This document shows positions 49,200 to 58,069 of a stretch of 64,000 bases of DNA, one piece after another; positions within the stretch are counted from its first letter, which is position 1, and every line of letters begins with the position of its first letter. A model generated the notes under the pieces. The model did not search any database, had not been told where the DNA came from, and was given only the letters and a program-made list of their open reading frames with translations. The position numbers and the translations under genes are program-made. Location of the stretch: the IMG/VR virus record IMGVR_UViG_3300046171_000252, positions 1 through 64,000 of that record, one strand, 5' to 3'.

Positions 49200-49628
49200 A
49201 TGGCAACTCGCTCACGCATTGGCATTCAACTCTCAGATGACTCTATTCTTTCTGTTTATCATCACTGGGATGGTTATCCTACTTGGTTGGGTCGGATTCT
49301 CAAGACGCACTACAATACAAAGGAGAAAGTAGCAGAACTGATTGATGGTGGCGATATGTCATCTTGCTGGACAAAGGATCGCTGGACTGGTAAGCAAGTT
49401 GCAAAATATGTGATCGAAAATGTTGAGGTTGAGGAATATGGTCCTCAGTATTATTCTGCTCGTGGTGAGAGTTGCCCTCCTCGTCTTGATGATGATATCA
49501 CTGAATTTCTGGACAATGGTGAAGAGTATTCTTACATCTTCACTCGTGCTGATGAGTGGATCTGCTACGATTTGCACGACATCACTGGAAAACTGACTGA
49601 GATTCCAGAAGGAGCACTTGCAGTATGA
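49200..49628 (+). CDS. Conserved phage hypothetical protein (YHHWDGYP family)
   Basis: MATRSRIG..YHHWDGYP..LG. Confidence 0.75.
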   Translation: MATRSRIGIQLSDDSILSVYHHWDGYPTWLGRILKTHYNTKEKVAELIDGGDMSSCWTKDRWTGKQVAKYVIENVEVEEYGPQYYSARGESCPPRLDDDITEFLDNGEEYSYIFTRADEWICYDLHDITGKLTEIPEGALAV

Positions 49629-49960
49629 CATCAATGCTTTTCACTTCCGGACAATCATCACACTCACATCTTGCTCAAAGTGTATTTGAGTTCTTTACAT
49701 CACTCTATGGTGTAAAGAGTGATGTTGAAGTATTTCATACAGATCTTACTGATGACAATGCATTTGGTTTTACTGAAATCAATGGTGATGAGCAATTCAT
49801 TCAGATTCATAATAATTTGAATGAGAAGGATTACATTACCACACTATTGCATGAACTTGTTCATGTTGTTCAGAATGAAAATGGTCAGTTTGATGACACT
49901 CGGAGAGAGGAGGAGGCATATGGGTTAGAGTCTATCCTGTTCAACCAGTTCAGGAAGTGA
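49625..49960 (+). CDS. Putative zincin-like metallopeptidase-fold protein
   Basis: TLLHELVHVVQ (HExxH) followed by EEEAY. Confidence 0.6.
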   Translation: MTSMLFTSGQSSHSHLAQSVFEFFTSLYGVKSDVEVFHTDLTDDNAFGFTEINGDEQFIQIHNNLNEKDYITTLLHELVHVVQNENGQFDDTRREEEAYGLESILFNQFRK

Positions 49961-50440: not shown

Positions 50441-50685
50441 ACCCACAATTTACTGGTGTATTTACAACGGTCAAAGAGCATGGTGGAGTCTATGCAGTTT
50501 GTACTGAGGGTGAATTATTTTACTCTCCAATGTATGAAGATGGTAGTGTGAATTTTGAGGAGTTTGAAATTGTAGATTTTTGGGATTCTGAAATTGACCC
50601 AGAGGAACTTGAAAAAATTCAATCTGTATTGATTGATATGATGCAGATTGCTGGTCTTTATTTCAAGTCCATGGTGCCAGTTTAA
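50437..50685 (+). CDS. Hypothetical protein
   Basis: ORF track entry; its last codons (CCA GTT TAA) lie in the 84-bp repeat. Confidence 0.65.
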   Translation: MNPQFTGVFTTVKEHGGVYAVCTEGELFYSPMYEDGSVNFEEFEIVDFWDSEIDPEELEKIQSVLIDMMQIAGLYFKSMVPV

Positions 50686-50760
50686 CTAGTGTCACACGGC
50701 ATGTTGAAACCCCATCAGGATGCCCTATAATACATTCATACAAGGGAAACCACCCATGAC
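50677..50760 (+). repeat. 84-bp exact direct repeat, left copy (stop codon, promoter, SD, ATG)
   Basis: Identical to 53888-53971 by direct comparison. Confidence 0.92.
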
Positions 50761-50938
50761 CACCTTTGACTTTGATACAGAATATTACTGGGGTGCTCTC
50801 ATGGTCAAACTGGTTCCCTTGTTTGCCATGGATGTTTACAAAGCATCCGATGATGAGTTGGTATGGGTTTTTGATGTGAACAACCCTGATAATGGGTATC
50901 ATGTTCCTGCTCGCAATCTTTCCACCTATTCTTATTGA
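50756..50938 (+). CDS. Hypothetical protein, 60 aa
   Basis: ATG 50756 and SD lie inside the repeat. Confidence 0.65.
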   Translation: MTTFDFDTEYYWGALMVKLVPLFAMDVYKASDDELVWVFDVNNPDNGYHVPARNLSTYSY

Positions 50939-51237
50939 TTATGTACTCCATCGAAATTATTGAAGAGTTTATCCGCAATCAAATTGCAAAGCCAACTGCC
51001 GATCCTACCATTTTCCGTAGTTGGTATAAGTATGCTAATGCCTCTGGTGAGTGGAATTTAACTAAAGGACATGCACCTGGATTTTGTCGTCTTGCAAAAA
51101 TTGCAGGCAAAAATATCAACGAAGAGTTTGGGTTTGATGTAATCAAGATGCACTTCTATGGTATCTGGAAAAACAATGAGATTAATAATCCCGAATTTAT
51201 GATTTGGGAAAAAGATCACGACTTCACACTGGTTTGA
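50935..51237 (+). CDS. Hypothetical protein
   Basis: ORF track entry; overlaps the previous stop. Confidence 0.65.
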   Translation: MIMYSIEIIEEFIRNQIAKPTADPTIFRSWYKYANASGEWNLTKGHAPGFCRLAKIAGKNINEEFGFDVIKMHFYGIWKNNEINNPEFMIWEKDHDFTLV

Positions 51238-51239
51238 TT

Positions 51240-51920
51240 ATGTCTGACAATCGCCCTACACTTGCAGAAGGATTTGCAAATGCCAAACAATATGAGGGAA
51301 AGAAAGTGGTTGATGTTCTGAGTAACATTACTAGACGCAATAAGGGTTCTGTTGGTAGCGAATTTGAGAAGAAGATTGGTATTCCTAAGTCTTCTGAAAG
51401 ATGTGATTACATTGATAGTGGTGATTGTAAGACTCTAAAATTCAAAAACAACAAACCCGCAGAATGTTGTGATATTATTATGCTTCAAGAGATTCTCCAT
51501 GAAGCGATGAACAACATCTCATTCTATGATAGTGCTGTATATGAAAAGATTCAACAAGTTCATTTTGCACCTATTAACAAGGATGGTGATATTGACGAGT
51601 GGACATTTGGTGAGAACTTTGTAATTTCTAAAGACACTAATCCTGCACTTTACAATCAAATGGAGAAGGATTACAATCATATCACTGAACGTATTCGCAC
51701 TCTAGTTAATTCTGGTCAGTATATTAGTGCTAGTGATGTGAATCAACGTTCGGCAGTTAAAATCCTTGAGATTCGTCCCAAGGGTGCAGGTGGTGGTTCA
51801 AGTAGAAACACTTGGAATGGTGTTGTTATCACCAAACCAGATGCACAATCTGCTTATTCTTATTACTTTAAGCAATCTGGTGTCAAGTACATCTACAACA
51901 ACCGATTGACAAATAATTAA
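51240..51920 (+). CDS. MutH/Sau3AI-family PD-(D/E)XK endonuclease
   Basis: NKGSVGSEFEKKIG..DY..GDCKTLK matches the MutH KG.G..E..D..E-x-K layout; LEIRPKGA motif; SYYFKQS. Confidence 0.65.
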   Translation: MSDNRPTLAEGFANAKQYEGKKVVDVLSNITRRNKGSVGSEFEKKIGIPKSSERCDYIDSGDCKTLKFKNNKPAECCDIIMLQEILHEAMNNISFYDSAVYEKIQQVHFAPINKDGDIDEWTFGENFVISKDTNPALYNQMEKDYNHITERIRTLVNSGQYISASDVNQRSAVKILEIRPKGAGGGSSRNTWNGVVITKPDAQSAYSYYFKQSGVKYIYNNRLTNN

Positions 51921-51934
51921 AAACCTGCTACACT
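51906..51934 (+). promoter_or_regulatory. Sigma70-type promoter TTGACA-N17-TACACT with extended TG
   Basis: Consensus -35 and correct spacing; upstream of the 52008 ORF and methylase. Confidence 0.7.
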
Positions 51935-52007
51935 GAATACATCGACAGAATACTCAACCATTACCGAGTTCTGTTATTCCTAACCATTATCCGGAAGCAT
52001 TACCACT

Positions 52008-53390
52008 ATGAAAACTATTTCATTCACAAAACAAAAAACTTGGAAAGAGAAAGTAGTTGACCAAGTTGTCAACACAGAGAAAAAATCTTTCAATACCAAA
52101 ATAAAAATTTTTGGAGAACTTCTTGTTCGTAAGGGAAATCGTTGGGTAAAGAGTACCGACCCAGTTACGATGCAAAGAGATTCTTCAAAGAGAGCAAAAA
52201 CTGATATTGTTGATGCTTATTATTTCAAAAAGAATCCAAACACAGATCGATGTCGTGGATATGATCATACTGCATCAAATATGGGAAATACTCTCATAGT
52301 TACTACCAAAGACATTGTTGATACTTTTGGTGAAAAAATTCCTGCCTTTAGTATCCTTCAACTTAACGGAAATACCAACCTTGTTGCTCAGTGTCAACTT
52401 CTCAATGGTGATATTACTATTCCTAATGATTATCAACTGAGTGATTTCATTGCATCAAAAGATGAAGAATTAGATTTTAATGTAATAGTCATTAGCAATC
52501 AAGCAGATTATAATTTTTACTATAAAATTGTTGACAATACTGTTAGTGCTAAATCAAAAGATGACAACTATTCTTCTTGCTTAGTTGGTCATAAACTTCT
52601 CAATTATGAAACTGGAGAAACAGATCTCATTACTTGGGTAACAAGAGCAATGGATCGACCTCTTTCATATTTGAATCTTAGTGCTGTTCCCAAAGATATT
52701 CCTGAGATGAATAAAATCTTCTCAGAATATAAGGGAGTAATTGTTAATGTAAGAGAAGAAACATCACCCATTGTCAACAATGGTGGCAGCAATCAATCTG
52801 TCTGGAAAGCATTTTGTTTAGACCTTTCTAAACTTGAACTTTCTGGAAAACTTTCTCCTCTTCAACTTTCTTCAGTCCTTGACAATCTAGGAAAAGAAAT
52901 TACCCAAGCATCTGACAAAAATGTTGAAGAATATTGGAACAATAAATTCTTTGGCATTAAGAAGAAACGAGGTTCTTCAATGATTGACACTAAACTTACA
53001 AATTTCAATAAATTTGTTTGTTCTCCAAAGTCTTCATGGACTCAACTAAGTTTTACTATTGAAGACTGGATTCTTTGGGAATTGTTTAGTGTAACTCGTG
53101 ATGATATTCGGGATGCACAAGATCATCGTCTTTATGGTCACGGCGGTGGTGACATTCTTGGTGGAAAAGATAGAACTGACGTTGCACATCAATCACTCAA
53201 CTTTTTAAGAACAATGTTGTTGTATGCTAATCACATTAACTTCGAAAGTCGTTTTACTGCTATTAAAGCATTTGAGTGGGCAGAAGAGAACATTTGCACG
53301 AAATTTGCAGCGGTTGACCAAGTTGATCGTCTTGACATTCTTGCAGATAAAAAAGTAAAATTAGCACTAAAGTCTCACATTTATTCATGA
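52008..53390 (+). CDS. Hypothetical protein, 460 aa
   Basis: Long ORF coupled (ATGA) to the methylase; no family recognised. Confidence 0.8.
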   Translation: MKTISFTKQKTWKEKVVDQVVNTEKKSFNTKIKIFGELLVRKGNRWVKSTDPVTMQRDSSKRAKTDIVDAYYFKKNPNTDRCRGYDHTASNMGNTLIVTTKDIVDTFGEKIPAFSILQLNGNTNLVAQCQLLNGDITIPNDYQLSDFIASKDEELDFNVIVISNQADYNFYYKIVDNTVSAKSKDDNYSSCLVGHKLLNYETGETDLITWVTRAMDRPLSYLNLSAVPKDIPEMNKIFSEYKGVIVNVREETSPIVNNGGSNQSVWKAFCLDLSKLELSGKLSPLQLSSVLDNLGKEITQASDKNVEEYWNNKFFGIKKKRGSSMIDTKLTNFNKFVCSPKSSWTQLSFTIEDWILWELFSVTRDDIRDAQDHRLYGHGGGDILGGKDRTDVAHQSLNFLRTMLLYANHINFESRFTAIKAFEWAEENICTKFAAVDQVDRLDILADKKVKLALKSHIYS

Positions 53391-53896
53391 CATCATCCAC
53401 ACTCAAAGTATTAACAGCAAGCACAGGTAATCGTAAAGACACATGGAACACTCCCCCCGAATTTGTGGGGGATGTTGTTAAGTTCTTCGGTGGTAGGATT
53501 GGATTAGACCCGTGCTCTAATAGTATGGATGAACCTAATGTTCCTGCCGACAAAGTTTATACTGAAGAAATGGATGGACTTCAACAAAGTTGGGTTGCTG
53601 ATAGTGTTTTCATGAATCATCCATATTCTGCTAGTAAAAAATGGATTCCCCATGCTGCTGCCCAATACGAAAATGGAAATGCGAAAGAAATGGTTCTTCT
53701 CATTAAGTTGGACGTTTCTACCAAATGGTGGAGATCTATTGAGAAATATCCATGGATAGGAGTCAATAGACGGTTAAGATTCGGTGCTGCCAAAAGTGCA
53801 GCACCATTTCAGTCTGCTATCATATACCTTGGGACTGATCTTGACCGATTTAAGAACACTTTTGGTAAGTATGGAACCCTTTATGCACCAGTTTAA
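53387..53896 (+). CDS. Phage DNA N6-adenine methyltransferase (Dam-like, PF05869 type)
   Basis: DTWNTPP, LDPCS, DGLQQSW, VFMNHPY (motif IV variant), TKWW. Confidence 0.85.
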   Translation: MTSSTLKVLTASTGNRKDTWNTPPEFVGDVVKFFGGRIGLDPCSNSMDEPNVPADKVYTEEMDGLQQSWVADSVFMNHPYSASKKWIPHAAAQYENGNAKEMVLLIKLDVSTKWWRSIEKYPWIGVNRRLRFGAAKSAAPFQSAIIYLGTDLDRFKNTFGKYGTLYAPV

Positions 53897-53971
53897 CTAG
53901 TGTCACACGGCATGTTGAAACCCCATCAGGATGCCCTATAATACATTCATACAAGGGAAACCACCCATGAC
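53888..53971 (+). repeat. 84-bp exact direct repeat, right copy
   Basis: Identical to 50677-50760. Confidence 0.92.
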
Positions 53972-54353
53972 TGCCACCTTCACCGACTACGTTGCTCAAC
54001 AGGATGCACGTAACACCATTCAGTTGAATGTCACTAAGTATGCTCTCATGCTTTGTGATGCACTGCAACAGTCTTATCAACGTCAGTATCCAAATGGTCG
54101 CAACTATTCTTATGCACTGATCTCCGGTCGTAAGTATCACAAAGTGATGCAGTGTGTAGATGGTCAAACTGAATCAGTTCATGCCTTCATTGATAAGAAA
54201 ACTGGTGAAGTATACAAACCAGCATCCGTCAAGGCACCGGCAAAAGGTGTTCGTTTCAATCTACTAATCATCGAAGAACGTGAGTTTGTGTTGGAGAACT
54301 GTGATTGGGCAGGTGGTTATCTCTACCGCAATGCATACTATCAAGGTGCATGA
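53967..54353 (+). CDS. Conserved phage hypothetical protein
   Basis: GRKYHKV..VHAFIDKKTGEVYKPAS.KAPAKGVRFNL. Confidence 0.75.
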   Translation: MTATFTDYVAQQDARNTIQLNVTKYALMLCDALQQSYQRQYPNGRNYSYALISGRKYHKVMQCVDGQTESVHAFIDKKTGEVYKPASVKAPAKGVRFNLLIIEEREFVLENCDWAGGYLYRNAYYQGA

Positions 54354-56887: not shown

Positions 56888-58069
56888 ATGGCAATTAATA
56901 ACACACAAACCAAATACTTTACTTCCGGAGAAATTAAATTCAGTGCCATTCGGGATACTTTTGGTGATTTAGCAGGAACGAATGTAAGTGCATCTGATTA
57001 TCTAAGAAATGCCGGTGATGATATAGATTGGTCCGATGATTCTAATATCACTCCCAGAGTACCAAATGCGACAGAGAATGCGGATGTTGCGACATCATCT
57101 AATTGGAGTACATCACAATTAAGAGATTCGATTGTAGAATATAATATCACACAAAGTGGAAATGATGAAGAATTAGAATTTGCGGATACGAATGCATCAC
57201 AATGGAATTCTAATTTATCAAAGAATGTTCCAAAGAGAATGGATGTGGAGGGTGTTGTTTATGCGAATGAGGTGAGTAAGTATGCACTGAAGTTTAGTGA
57301 GGGAGAATATAATAATCTAACGATTAATGTACCGGACGGTGGTGCAATCTATGGTGAGGGTGGTGCTGCCGGAGGAGGAAATGGTGGTGGTGCCCTGTAT
57401 ATTGAGAATACTGCCAGTTATGATAATGTATCAATCACATTAGGAAGTAATGGTCGAATATGGGCCGGAGGTGGCGGTGGAAATAGTGGAAATAGTGGAA
57501 ATAGTGGTTCATCTATTAGTTGTTCTGTTAATAGTAACAATATTACTGGTAATTATACTAGTAACGGAAGAAATTATCCTGGAAATGCGGCAGGAATTAG
57601 TGCCTGTCAGCAAAATACTGGTTTTGGTGTGAATAGTGTAATTTCTGCCAATCCAAATAGTGTAAGAAATCGTTGTCGTGGTGGATCATTTCGTGCGGGA
57701 CAAGGATGGAATCCGAATTCAAAGAGCGGATATCAATGTAGTCCAAATTGGTCATTTGTTTGTAGTGGATCATCATCCAATAATATTGGTGGTGGTAATG
57801 GAGGTTCTGGAGGTAGTGGAGGAGTCGGACAAGGATTCAGTAATCAGAGTGGACCCGGTGCCGGTAATCCTGGTAATAGTGGTAATACTAACTCATGTGG
57901 AAACTCAGGTGCAAGTAGCAGTGGAAATCCCGGAAATAGTGGTGGTACAGGAGGAACATGGGGAGTTTCTGCCGGAGGTAGTGCCGGAATTGCGATTAAG
58001 AAGAAGAGTACAAGTGTCAATCAAGGATTATCGGCTAATACTGTCAAGGGCGGAATCAGTAATATATAA
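56888..58069 (+). CDS. Gly-rich tail fibre tip / gp38-like adhesin
   Basis: IYGEGGAAGGGNGGGAL, GRIWAGGGGG, Gly/Asn/Ser repeats with Cys-containing segments, GGSAGIAI near the C-terminus. Confidence 0.6.
   Translation: MAINNTQTKYFTSGEIKFSAIRDTFGDLAGTNVSASDYLRNAGDDIDWSDDSNITPRVPNATENADVATSSNWSTSQLRDSIVEYNITQSGNDEELEFADTNASQWNSNLSKNVPKRMDVEGVVYANEVSKYALKFSEGEYNNLTINVPDGGAIYGEGGAAGGGNGGGALYIENTASYDNVSITLGSNGRIWAGGGGGNSGNSGNSGSSISCSVNSNNITGNYTSNGRNYPGNAAGISACQQNTGFGVNSVISANPNSVRNRCRGGSFRAGQGWNPNSKSGYQCSPNWSFVCSGSSSNNIGGGNGGSGGSGGVGQGFSNQSGPGAGNPGNSGNTNSCGNSGASSSGNPGNSGGTGGTWGVSAGGSAGIAIKKKSTSVNQGLSANTVKGGISNI

What the first reader, a model, noticed from the sequence alone, without database searches (positions are those of the whole stretch)
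51240..53896. Putative phage-encoded restriction-modification or anti-competitor system
Seen: a solitary-domain MutH/Sau3AI-like nuclease under the early promoter; the methylase with its own sigma70 promoter shared with the orphan; methylase motif IV reads NHPY rather than NPPY. GATC is abundant in this window (e.g. many Kelch blades), so a GATC cutter would require self-protection. Known: MutH and Sau3AI recognise GATC, MutH only on the unmethylated strand; characterised PF05869 phage enzymes include GATC Dam methylases. Inference: marks self DNA and cuts host or co-infecting phage DNA. Specificity is unproven.
Basis: partly seen in the sequence, partly recalled or inferred. Interest (0 to 1): 0.72.

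Follow-up and report, generated by a model that had tools for sequence, protein, structure and literature searches.

The report
Cyanophage MutH-like nuclease plus Dam cassette
A marine cyanophage carries a small swappable gene cassette that pairs a MutH-type DNA-nicking enzyme with a Dam-type DNA methylase. It most likely lets the phage mark its own DNA and cut the unmarked DNA of its host or of rival phages; the same pairing recurs in many ocean cyanophages and, as far as I could find, has not been tested.

Summary
ORF1 (51240-51920, 226 aa) is a single-domain MutH/Sau3AI-fold protein. Its only significant fold matches are MutH and Sau3AI, and every MutH catalytic and GATC/methyl-sensing residue I checked is conserved. 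ORF3 (53387-53896) is a PF05869 methylase whose motif IV reads NHPY. That variant is present in 119 of its 120 closest homologues, so it is a selected clade trait, not decay.

Comparative genomics supports a functional link. In all 15 loci with downstream DNA, the nuclease is followed within two genes by a Dam-type methylase, either PF05869 or the unrelated PF02086 (a close E. coli Dam homologue). A distant 197-aa sister nuclease abuts Dam in cultured Synechococcus myophages and is fused to Dam in phage S-8S29. Cellular relatives pass Pfam MutH and sit between GATC-type methylases.

The "orphan" ORF2 is a conserved third partner, probably of ParB/DUF262-like fold. The cassette is bracketed by an 84-nt perfect repeat and is absent from relative S-SKS1. 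Published surveys report that picocyanobacterial hosts lack both Dam and MutH.

Best reading (0.55): a phage-borne, methylation-sensitive GATC nicking/cutting module. Specificity, methyl sensitivity and the in-vivo target remain untested.

The parts
50677..50760 (+). Left copy of the 84-nt perfect direct repeat. It holds the last 9 nt of the upstream gene, a TTGAAA-16-TATAAT promoter-like site (50704-50731), a ribosome-binding site and ATGAC.
   Evidence: There are only two copies in the 207.6-kb genome. S-SKS1 has one copy at 92% identity.
50756..50938 (+). orfA, 60 aa, phrog_12800 (unknown function). It travels with the nuclease or with Dam.
   Evidence: A homologue lies directly upstream of the PF02086 Dam in S-RIM12.
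50935..51237 (+). orfB, 100 aa, unknown function; a mobile companion of the nuclease.
   Evidence: It is 71% identical to the 100-aa ORF between the nuclease and Dam in L010. Its position varies between loci.
51240..51920 (+). ORF1, a single-domain MutH/Sau3AI-fold PD-(D/E)XK endonuclease (226 aa). The predicted catalytic residues are E43, D56, D62 and K64. R179, K181 and Y209 align with MutH R184, K186 and Y212.
   Evidence: dN/dS is 0.11-0.24.
51906..51934 (+). Internal sigma70-like promoter (TTGACA-17-TACACT, extended TG) for ORF2 and ORF3.
   Evidence: The TTGACA is invariant across six loci, even those with different middle genes.
52008..53390 (+). ORF2, 460 aa, a rare family with no HMM match. 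Its N-terminal part is probably of ParB/DUF262 (GmrSD_N)-like fold. It is the 'middle gene' of the module.
   Evidence: dN/dS is 0.15 against its 93%-identical homologue.
53387..53896 (+). ORF3, a PF05869 (phage Dam-type) N6-adenine DNA methyltransferase, 169 aa.
   Evidence: dN/dS is 0.17-0.22.
53615..53626 (+). Motif IV codons AAT CAT CCA TAT = N-H-P-Y (residues 77-80).
   Evidence: NHPY is present in 119 of the 120 closest homologues.
53888..53971 (+). Right copy of the 84-nt repeat. It overlaps the last 9 nt of ORF3 and supplies the promoter, ribosome-binding site and start codon of the DUF7717 gene (53967-54353).

Best explanation
The region 50677-53971 is a mobile cassette shared among marine cyanophages. 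It encodes a GATC-directed, methylation-sensitive endonuclease of the single-domain MutH type (ORF1). It also encodes a Dam-type N6-adenine methylase (ORF3, the NHPY variant of PF05869) and an accessory protein probably of ParB/DUF262-like fold (ORF2).

Proposed mechanism:
- The methylase, driven with ORF2 from its own conserved promoter, keeps the phage's roughly 640 GATC sites methylated.
- The nuclease, like MutH, incises any GATC strand whose adenine is unmethylated.
- Published surveys report that marine picocyanobacteria lack a GATC methylase, so the host chromosome is the default substrate, along with the DNA of co-infecting phages that lack Dam.
- The outcome would be host DNA breakdown or shut-off, nucleotide salvage, and/or exclusion of competitors. 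This is a phage-borne type II R-M-like device.

Shown here:
- the fold and conserved active-site and recognition residues of ORF1;
- family membership of ORF3 and conservation of its motif;
- gene linkage across non-homologous methylases, plus a fusion;
- purifying selection on all three genes;
- promoter conservation and the cassette boundaries.

Inferred:
- GATC specificity of both enzymes;
- blockage of the nuclease by m6A;
- nuclease activity without a MutL-like activator;
- the in-vivo target;
- the role of ORF2.
For: ORF1 is MutH-like.
- Its only significant fold matches are MutH and Sau3AI.
- In an alignment with E. coli MutH, MutH K48, E56, D70, E77, K79, K116, R184, K186 and Y212 align to ORF1 K35, E43, D56, D62, K64, K103, R179, K181 and Y209. 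Each of these columns is identical in all eleven aligned sequences, except that the E77 position is D in the ORF1 family and E elsewhere.
- Tyr212 is reported as the residue that reads methylation status (PMC3848065).

Linkage to Dam.
- In 15 of 15 loci with downstream DNA, the ORF1 family is followed within two genes by a Dam-type methylase: PF05869 in 8 and PF02086 in 7.
- L038 has a 93%-identical ORF2 and an 88%-identical ORF1 fragment, but a PF02086 methylase.
- The PF02086 partner is a close homologue of E. coli Dam, M.DpnII and T4 Dam, all GATC enzymes.
- A distant 197-aa relative (hhalign probability 92%) overlaps the NHPY methylase in abundant marine contigs.
- That relative is present in 25 cultured-Synechococcus-phage records. 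It follows Dam in the two checked, S-RIM8 A.HR1 and WH25-B.
- It is fused to Dam in S-8S29 with its catalytic residues intact.

Cellular relatives and selection.
- Cellular relatives pass Pfam MutH. In a Zixiibacteria genome one lies between a PF02086 and a PF01555 methylase, a DpnII-like layout.
- dN/dS is 0.1-0.25 for all three genes.
- NHPY is present in 119 of 120 homologues.

Host and genome context.
- mutH is absent from all cyanobacteria (PMC5101192).
- GATC is not avoided in the phage genome.
Against: - No specificity or activity has been measured for any of the three proteins.
- E. coli MutH is nearly inactive without MutL, and no MutL-like gene is in the cassette.
- MutH cuts hemimethylated sites best, so a MutH-like enzyme would nick the phage's own newly replicated DNA unless methylation is fast.
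- Sau3AI, the restriction enzyme of this fold, is paired with a C5-cytosine methylase rather than an m6A methylase.
- The NHPY methylase family (492 clusters) is far commoner than the ORF1 family (46 clusters), and it occurs without any MutH-like neighbour. Its main role may therefore be independent of the nuclease.
- The genome has a second, non-Dam-like PF02086 methylase.
- The ORF1 model is only of moderate confidence, with pLDDT below 50 around the catalytic loop 54-63.
Confidence: 0.55

Rival explanations
1. Methyl-directed nicking of the phage's own DNA. Dam marks parental strands, and the MutH-like enzyme nicks the nascent, still unmethylated strand at hemimethylated GATC. That would feed strand-directed repair, or create 3' ends for recombination-dependent replication. 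The target is self, not the host.
For: The full MutH residue set, including the Tyr212 equivalent, is kept. MutH prefers hemimethylated sites (PMC3848065). The module lies beside a DEAD/ResIII helicase in many loci. The host has no MutH of its own.
Against: No MutS or MutL homologue was seen in any of the cassettes. Cellular relatives sit in R-M-like layouts with two methylases, not in repair operons. The Dam::nuclease fusion and the free exchange of methylase family fit toxin/antidote logic better than a repair pathway.
Confidence: 0.17
2. The functional pair is ORF2 plus ORF3: a ParB/DUF262-like DNA-binding or NTPase protein acting with the methylase. This could be a targeting, regulating or modification-sensing unit, or ORF2 could be the true cognate nuclease. 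ORF1 would then be a facultative add-on with a separate role.
For: ORF2 and ORF3 overlap by ATGA and share a conserved promoter. An ORF2-like 479-aa gene abuts PF05869 with no MutH-like gene on the contig. Other members of the NHPY clade are preceded by a PDDEXK_11 nuclease. RNA-library contigs cover ORF2 and ORF3 but not ORF1.
Against: ORF2 also occurs with the unrelated PF02086 methylase (L038, L031, L034). The nuclease occurs next to Dam with no middle gene at all (L010, L011). ORF2 shows no recognisable nuclease motif and only weak fold matches. The contigs are only 3-4 kb long, so a nuclease could lie beyond them.
Confidence: 0.12
3. The methylase is simply an orphan anti-restriction enzyme that protects phage DNA from host R-M systems. 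The MutH-like gene is an unrelated nuclease that happens to lie in the same hyperplastic, promoter-shuffled region.
For: PADLOC classes ORF3 as an orphan methyltransferase. The methylase family is about ten times more diverse and abundant than the nuclease family. The region is visibly shuffled relative to S-SKS1.
Against: Chance adjacency does not explain three things: linkage in 15 of 15 loci through a swap of methylase family, the independent pairing of the 197-aa sister family, and a fusion protein.
Confidence: 0.1
4. ORF1 is a catalytically dead GATC-binding protein, like the C-terminal effector domain of Sau3AI or functionally like SeqA, that reads methylation state for regulation.
For: Sau3AI contains such an inactive MutH-like domain, and it appears among the fold matches (7XM0, 2REU). 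The model is poorly confident around the catalytic loop.
Against: E43, D56, D62, K64 and K103 are invariant across the family, its 197-aa sister family and the fusion. A non-enzyme would not be expected to keep them.
Confidence: 0.05

Closest known systems
E. coli MutH with Dam (methyl-directed mismatch repair)
   Same: Same fold and size (226 vs 229 aa). The same catalytic and GATC/methyl-sensing residues are present. The partner is an m6A Dam-type methylase.
   Different: MutH and dam are unlinked chromosomal genes, and MutH needs MutS and MutL. Here the genes are linked or fused, they are phage-borne, no MutS or MutL is present, and the hosts lack MutH and Dam. Sequence similarity is far below the family cut-offs.
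Sau3AI-type type II R-M (GATC)
   Same: The restriction enzyme has a MutH fold (4PXG match; PADLOC REase_II). It forms a nuclease plus methylase gene pair.
   Different: Sau3AI has two MutH-like domains (about 490 aa) and, from established knowledge, a C5-cytosine methylase. ORF1 has a single domain and its partner is an N6-adenine methylase.
DpnII-type GATC R-M (two methylases of classes PF02086 and PF01555)
   Same: A cellular relative of ORF1 in a Zixiibacteria genome lies between exactly these two methylase classes. The cyanophage PF02086 partner matches M.DpnII.
   Different: R.DpnII belongs to another nuclease family (established knowledge). The window uses a PF05869 methylase and adds a ParB/DUF262-like gene.
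BcnI/MvaI monomeric restriction enzymes
   Same: These are single-domain MutH-related enzymes that cut both strands by two sequential nicks. The 197-aa sister family and the cellular relatives give weak Pfam MvaI_BcnI hits.
   Different: They have different recognition sites (CCSGG, CCWGG). ORF1 itself gives no hit to that family.
Chlorovirus-encoded R-M systems
   Same: These are virus-encoded methylase plus nuclease pairs, with host DNA degradation beginning within minutes of infection (PMC7019647). This is the closest functional analogue of the proposed role.
   Different: They belong to a eukaryotic algal virus, the enzymes are packaged in the virion, and the nuclease families are unrelated.
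Phage T1/Tls-type Dam (PF05869)
   Same: Same family, with shared motif I Asp and the N..PY core of motif IV.
   Different: Tls Dam is 246 aa and has NPPY. The cyanophage clade is about 170 aa and has NHPY. It scores below the TIGR01712 equivalog cut-off (56.5 vs 97.05 bits).
DUF262/ParB-like proteins of DNA-modification and restriction systems (GmrSD, BrxU, SspE, DndB)
   Same: ORF2's model gives its only thematically consistent matches to these. The alternative middle genes X332 and X328 carry a DGQH motif and hit a ParB-like PHROG.
   Different: All matches are weak (TM by hit <=0.55 for the named clusters, Z <=4.2). ORF2 has NGNT where DGQ(Q/H)R would lie. No fused nuclease domain was recognised.

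Membership tests
MutH family (Pfam PF02976 / NCBIfam TIGR02248, NF003458) | Profile score above the curated cut-off | tested here: not met
   No Pfam hit at E<=0.1. NF003458 scores 26.8 bits against a cut-off of 243, and TIGR02248 scores 22 against 229.9. Cellular relatives at 25% identity do pass PF02976, at 51 and 56 bits against 23.
MutH family | MutH/Sau3AI fold | tested here: met
   All 11 Foldseek PDB matches with E<=1e-3 are MutH or Sau3AI; the best is 2AOR at E 2.5e-8, TM 0.63. The model's pLDDT is 71.5.
MutH family | Catalytic E56, D70, E77, K79 and K116 | tested here: met
   They align to ORF1 E43, D56, D62 (a conservative E-to-D change), K64 and K103. These positions are conserved across the ORF1 family, the 197-aa family and the fusion.
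MutH family | GATC-recognition and methyl-sensor residues R184, K186 and Y212 | tested here: met
   They align to ORF1 R179, K181 and Y209, which are invariant. The role of Tyr212 is from PMC3848065. F94 aligns to M81.
MutH family | Acts in MutS/MutL-dependent mismatch repair | not testable with these tools
   No MutS or MutL is in the cassette. Cyanobacteria lack mutH.
Type II restriction-modification system | Adjacent nuclease and methylase genes, with the linkage conserved across genomes | tested here: met
   Linkage holds in 15 of 15 loci and with two methylase families. A fusion exists in S-8S29.
Type II restriction-modification system | Both enzymes share one recognition sequence, and methylation blocks cleavage | not testable with these tools
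   This is inferred only, from MutH-like recognition residues and from the E. coli Dam-like alternative partner.
Sau3AI-type restriction enzyme | Two tandem MutH-like domains (catalytic plus allosteric) | tested here: not met
   ORF1 is 226 aa and aligns one-to-one with the 229-aa MutH. It covers only positions 44-247 of the 527-position PADLOC model.
PF05869 phage Dam methyltransferase | Profile score above the Pfam gathering threshold | tested here: met
   65.6 bits against 28.1, and phrog_111 at E 3e-33. It falls below the NCBIfam equivalog cut-off, 56.5 against 97.05.
PF05869 phage Dam methyltransferase | Canonical motif IV (D/N)PP(Y/F) | tested here: not met
   It reads NHPY. N77, P79 and Y80 are conserved, but the first Pro is His. 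The variant is present in 119 of 120 close homologues, and NHPF occurs in a Vibrio phage enzyme.
PF05869 phage Dam methyltransferase | Methylates adenine in GATC | not testable with these tools
   The only evidence is indirect: the gene occupies the same slot as an E. coli Dam-like enzyme beside near-identical ORF1 and ORF2.
ParB/Srx - DUF262 (GmrSD_N) - DndB superfamily (for ORF2) | Profile match, or the DGQ(Q/H)R motif | tested here: not met
   No hit in Pfam, PHROGs, NCBIfam or PADLOC. ORF2 has NGNT at the structurally equivalent spot.
ParB/Srx - DUF262 (GmrSD_N) - DndB superfamily (for ORF2) | Shared fold | tested here: inconclusive
   AFDB clusters: best E 2e-3, with names ParB/Sulfiredoxin, DndB, DUF262 and DGQHR. 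VIA Z 3.1-4.0 to sulfiredoxin, BrxU and PadC. ESM Atlas: GmrSD_N clusters at TM by hit 0.55. The PDB Foldseek search found nothing.

The most novel reading that the evidence does not exclude
The three genes form an autonomous phage 'methyl-directed DNA destruction' machine. The ParB/DUF262-like middle protein (ORF2, or the DGQH-type X332/X328 in other phages) would take the place of MutL as the loader or activator of a latent MutH-type nickase. Dam methylation would be the only self mark. This would give hmC-less cyanophages the functional equivalent of T4's modified-base plus EndoII/IV strategy for destroying Dam-less picocyanobacterial chromosomes. It would be a new three-component architecture for R-M-like systems.
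Probability: 0.15. Interest if true: 0.78.

Novelty: new variant of a known kind. Interest (0 to 1): 0.6.

Why it matters
T4-like and other marine cyanophages recycle host DNA. They lack the hydroxymethyl-cytosine system that lets T4 tell its own DNA from the host's, so how they discriminate is not settled.

A Dam mark combined with a methylation-sensitive MutH-type nuclease would be a simple answer, working in hosts that are reported to lack GATC methylation. The module is common in ocean metagenomes and is present in cultured phage-host pairs (S-RIM8, S-IOM18 and S-CAM7 on Synechococcus WH7803), so the idea is directly testable.

It would also do three further things:
- add a stand-alone MutH-like enzyme with an m6A partner to the known GATC R-M types;
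- show that NHPY is a working motif-IV variant;
- give a function to two PHROG families (15364 and 2558) now listed as unknown.

The free exchange of two unrelated Dam families in one slot is a clean natural example of non-orthologous displacement within a toxin/antidote-like pair.

Tried and rejected
- Sequence searches of the PDB with ORF1 alone and with its family profile found no MutH. Only fold comparison and NCBIfam/PADLOC profiles did.
- hhalign of the ORF1 family against a single E. coli MutH sequence gave only 8% probability, E 0.004. I used that alignment only for residue correspondence, together with MAFFT.
- ORF2 had no hit in Pfam, PHROGs, NCBIfam or PADLOC, including a scan of all eight family members. 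Its family profile found nothing in the PDB by sequence or by Foldseek.
- hhalign of the ORF2 family against X332 and X328 found nothing. The idea that all the middle genes share a fold therefore rests on weak structure matches only.
- An exhaustive HMMER search found just 13 ORF2 relatives.
- Complex prediction for ORF2 with ORF1 returned no verdict (score 0.00). This is evidence neither for nor against binding.
- I considered whether the 84-nt repeat is a genome-wide promoter family of the T4 PeSL kind. It is not: there are only two copies.
- The genome-contig scan gave only two cellular relatives.
- I considered that the second methylase in the genome might make ORF3 redundant. This is not supported, because it is not Dam-like.
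- RNA-library contigs cannot be taken as proof of transcription.
The models therefore rest on the shallower alignments A1 and A2.
Full report
**Source and setting.** The window is the first 64 kb of a 207.6-kb IMG/VR virus record. Its nearest named relative is the Synechococcus WH7803 phage S-SKS1 (Llyrvirus, 208 kb). S-SKS1 matches the flanks of the finding but not the finding itself.

**The three ORFs.** The stretch 51240-53896 holds three co-oriented ORFs.
- ORF1, 51240-51920, 226 aa.
- ORF2, 52008-53390, 460 aa.
- ORF3, 53387-53896, 169 aa, overlapping ORF2 by ATGA.

**The cassette.**
- An 84-nt perfect direct repeat lies at 50677-50760 and at 53888-53971. These are the only two copies in the genome.
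- Each copy carries the last 9 nt of the upstream gene, a TTGAAA-16-TATAAT promoter-like site, a ribosome-binding site and an ATG.
- The repeat brackets a five-gene cassette: orfA (60 aa), orfB (100 aa), ORF1, ORF2 and ORF3.
- S-SKS1 has a single copy of this promoter element at 92% identity and lacks the cassette. Neighbouring genes are also rearranged between the two phages.
- Contigs identical to the cassette over 2-3 kb occur in two further marine metagenomes from other studies, so this is not an assembly artefact.

**ORF1 is a single-domain MutH-type nuclease.**
- Pfam is silent.
- NCBIfam MutH models hit at E 2.5e-6, well below their cut-offs. A PADLOC type II restriction-enzyme model of Sau3AI-like length hits at E 1.6e-8.
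- The AF2 model has pLDDT 71.5 and pTM 0.72. It has exactly eleven PDB matches with E<=1e-3, all MutH (2AOR, 2AOQ, 1AZO, 2AZO) or Sau3AI (4PXG, 7XM0, 2REU).
- I aligned ORF1 with E. coli MutH taken from NC_000913.3. MutH K48, E56, D70, E77, K79, K116, R184, K186 and Y212 correspond to ORF1 K35, E43, D56, D62, K64, K103, R179, K181 and Y209.
- Each of those columns is identical in all eleven aligned sequences, except that the E77 position is Asp in the ORF1 family and Glu elsewhere.
- Tyr212 is described as the residue that reads the methylation state of GATC. MutH cuts the unmethylated strand of hemimethylated sites as well as fully unmethylated sites, and it barely touches fully methylated DNA (PMC3848065).
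- dN/dS against six homologues is 0.11-0.24.
- Two cellular relatives at 25% identity, 203 and 209 aa, pass the Pfam MutH threshold. They bridge ORF1 to the family.

**ORF3 is a PF05869 methylase with a selected NHPY motif.**
- It scores 65.6 bits against the Pfam cut-off of 28.1.
- Motif IV is NHPY (window 53615-53626). Tls, staphylococcal and lactococcal phage enzymes have NPPY there. The Asn, the second Pro and the Tyr are conserved, and a Vibrio phage enzyme has NHPF.
- NHPY is present in 119 of the 120 closest homologues, which are 65-95% identical. dN/dS is 0.17-0.22.
- The His is therefore a selected clade character, and an inactive enzyme is unlikely.
- Its specificity cannot be read from sequence.

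**Linkage, the main new evidence.**
- The ORF1 family is small: 46 clusters, all at least 65% identical and all from marine metagenomes.
- Among the 23 loci I could examine, every one of the 15 that extends downstream has a Dam-type methylase within two genes of the nuclease. Eight have PF05869 and seven have the unrelated PF02086.
- L038 carries an ORF2 that is 93% identical and an ORF1 fragment that is 88% identical to the window's, followed by PF02086 instead of PF05869.
- That PF02086 partner is a close homologue of E. coli Dam (E 1e-65), M.DpnII and T4 Dam, all GATC enzymes.
- A more distant 197-aa MutH-like family (hhalign probability 92% to the ORF1 family; same PHROG 15364; catalytic residues kept) overlaps the NHPY methylase in very abundant marine contigs.
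- That family is present in 25 cultured-Synechococcus-phage records. In the two I checked, S-RIM8 A.HR1 and WH25-B, it follows a PF02086-type Dam by about 70 bp. One record annotates it as MutH and the rest as hypothetical.
- It is fused to Dam in a single 492-aa protein in S-8S29.
- In a Zixiibacteria genome, the cellular relative lies between a PF02086 and a PF01555 methylase. This is the two-methylase layout of DpnII-type GATC systems.
- Replacement of the methylase by a non-homologue, independent pairing in a sister family, and a fusion together argue that the nuclease depends on Dam-type (most simply GATC) methylation.

**The 'orphan' ORF2.**
- It belongs to a very rare family, with 13 representatives among 1.8 billion proteins, and it is under purifying selection.
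- The slot between nuclease and methylase holds one of three things: ORF2-type proteins (460-479 aa), an unrelated 328-355-aa family, or nothing. The 328-355-aa family is PHROG 2558, with a DGQH motif, a ParB-like secondary PHROG hit and a weak DUF6551 hit.
- An ORF2-type gene also abuts the NHPY methylase on contigs without a MutH-like gene.
- The ORF2 model is good (pLDDT 83.5, pTM 0.80) but has no significant PDB neighbour.
- The weak matches all point the same way.
  - AFDB clusters are named ParB/Sulfiredoxin, DndB, DUF262 and DGQHR.
  - VIA gives Z 3-4 to sulfiredoxin, the BrxU N-domain, PadC and SspE for residues ~25-180.
  - ESM Atlas by shape finds viral clusters of 329-335 aa (TM by hit 0.70) and GmrSD_N clusters (TM by hit 0.55).
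  - ESM Atlas by sequence features gives GmrSD_N and ParB_N leads.
- I treat 'ParB/DUF262-like accessory' as a lead, not a finding.
- The spacer after the nuclease stop carries TTGACA, about 17 nt, then TAcAcT. The TTGACA is invariant in six loci, even where the middle gene differs.

**Host side.**
[quoted passage not shown] It also reports that TGATCA is the most over-represented hexamer in many genomes of that group (PMC4390886).
- mutH is absent from all cyanobacteria (PMC5101192).
- The phage genome keeps 644 GATC sites (observed/expected 0.92 by composition). It strongly avoids GGCC, AGCT, GTAC and TCGA. GATC is therefore not under avoidance, as expected if it is protected by methylation.

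**Mechanism proposed (confidence 0.55).** The methylase marks phage GATC sites. The MutH-type enzyme incises unmethylated GATC strands. Unmethylated host DNA, or the DNA of co-infecting phages without Dam, is the target. The closest functional precedent is the chlorovirus R-M systems, which begin degrading host DNA within minutes (PMC7019647).

**Weak points.**
- MutH's own latency without MutL.
- Its preference for hemimethylated DNA, which would endanger replicating phage DNA.
- The much wider distribution of the methylase than of the nuclease.
- The absence of any biochemical data.

**Rivals.**
- Self-directed nicking for repair or recombination (0.17).
- An ORF2-ORF3 functional pair with ORF1 facultative (0.12).
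- Coincidental adjacency to an anti-restriction methylase (0.10).
- A catalytically dead GATC reader (0.05).

**Comparison with what is known and novelty.**
- By fold and residues ORF1 works like MutH. It fails the profile cut-offs of the MutH family and lacks the MutS/MutL context, so I do not file it as MutH proper.
- It is not Sau3AI-type, because it has one domain and an m6A partner.
- ORF3 is a member of PF05869 with a non-canonical motif IV.
- Dam plus MutH-like pairs are visible in deposited cyanomyophage genomes, but I found no paper treating them, and PHROGs lists the families as unknown.
- I rate this a new variant of a known kind, interest 0.6. It is a stand-alone MutH-type nuclease wired to interchangeable Dam families, with a third ParB/DUF262-like gene, carried in a promoter-bracketed cassette.

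**RNA libraries.** Contigs identical to ORF2 (52443-52908) and near-identical to ORF3 (53664-53814) occur in an oligo-dT marine RNA-seq run. In a second metatranscriptome, a diverged ORF2 contig runs on into a PF02086-type methylase start. No RNA-library contig covered ORF1. This fits separate, stronger expression of ORF2 and the methylase, but DNA carry-over cannot be excluded.

Noticed in passing
window 50677-50760 and 53888-53971; L002 4001-4080: The 84-nt perfect repeat begins inside the last three codons (Pro-Val-stop) of both upstream genes and ends at ATGAC of both downstream genes. S-SKS1 has one copy at about 92% identity and no cassette. This looks like the footprint of cassette insertion or duplication by recombination at a shared promoter/ribosome-binding-site element, possibly from a cyanomyovirus: orfA and DUF7717 are 86-89% identical at the DNA level to S-RIM12 and ACG-2014d.
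   Followed up: partly
L014:2038-3516 (Synechococcus phage S-8S29, OQ504979.1): A 492-aa protein annotated 'DNA adenine methylase' is a fusion of a PF02086 Dam domain (residues 8-254) and a MutH-like domain (about 321-474) with the E, D and ExK residues intact. In S-RIM8 and WH25-B the same two parts are separate genes.
   Followed up: partly
G000:C1:120829-121524 (L012:1474-2370): The phage genome has a second adenine methylase (PF02086, 298 aa). Its best solved relative is 7M6B rather than E. coli Dam, so it probably has another specificity. It is followed by a 308-aa ORF with no family.
   Followed up: partly
whole genome G000: There is strong avoidance of GGCC, AGCT, GTAC, TCGA, ACGT, GCGC and CGCG (observed/expected 0.18-0.33 by composition), while GATC (0.92) and CCGG (1.23) are not avoided. 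This suggests pressure from host restriction systems with those sites.
   Followed up: no
L021:3508-3975 and L022:3508-3975: In another abundant cyanophage lineage, the NHPY methylase is preceded by a 155-aa PDDEXK_11 nuclease-family protein instead of a MutH-like one. The methylase may therefore partner with several unrelated small nucleases.
   Followed up: no
L005:878-1876, L007:6786-7772: The alternative middle genes (332 and 328 aa, PHROG 2558, 28% identical to each other) carry a DGQH(K/T) motif typical of ParB/DndB/DUF262-type domains.
   Followed up: partly
L043:350-946 (Vibrio phage K233): A distant PF05869 methylase (31% identical) has NHPF at motif IV and a Cys-rich insertion of about 30 aa after it. 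The Pro-to-His change therefore arose, or is kept, in more than one phage lineage.
   Followed up: no
window 49625-49960: A 111-aa ORF has an IrrE/M78-type zinc-peptidase motif (HELVH; Pfam Peptidase_M78, E 2.4e-7), just upstream of the cassette region.
   Followed up: no
window 56888-58069: A 393-aa ORF is extremely rich in Gly/Ser/Asn repeats (GGxGG, GNSGN runs). It coincides with a jump in GC skew at 56-60 kb.
   Followed up: no
window 50600-54000 in runs X2 and X3: Word depth at the two repeat copies and their outer flanks is about 10-fold higher than inside the cassette (about 85-112 against 7.9 in X2). The promoter/DUF7717 flanks are therefore shared by many more phage genomes in those samples than the cassette is.
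   Followed up: no
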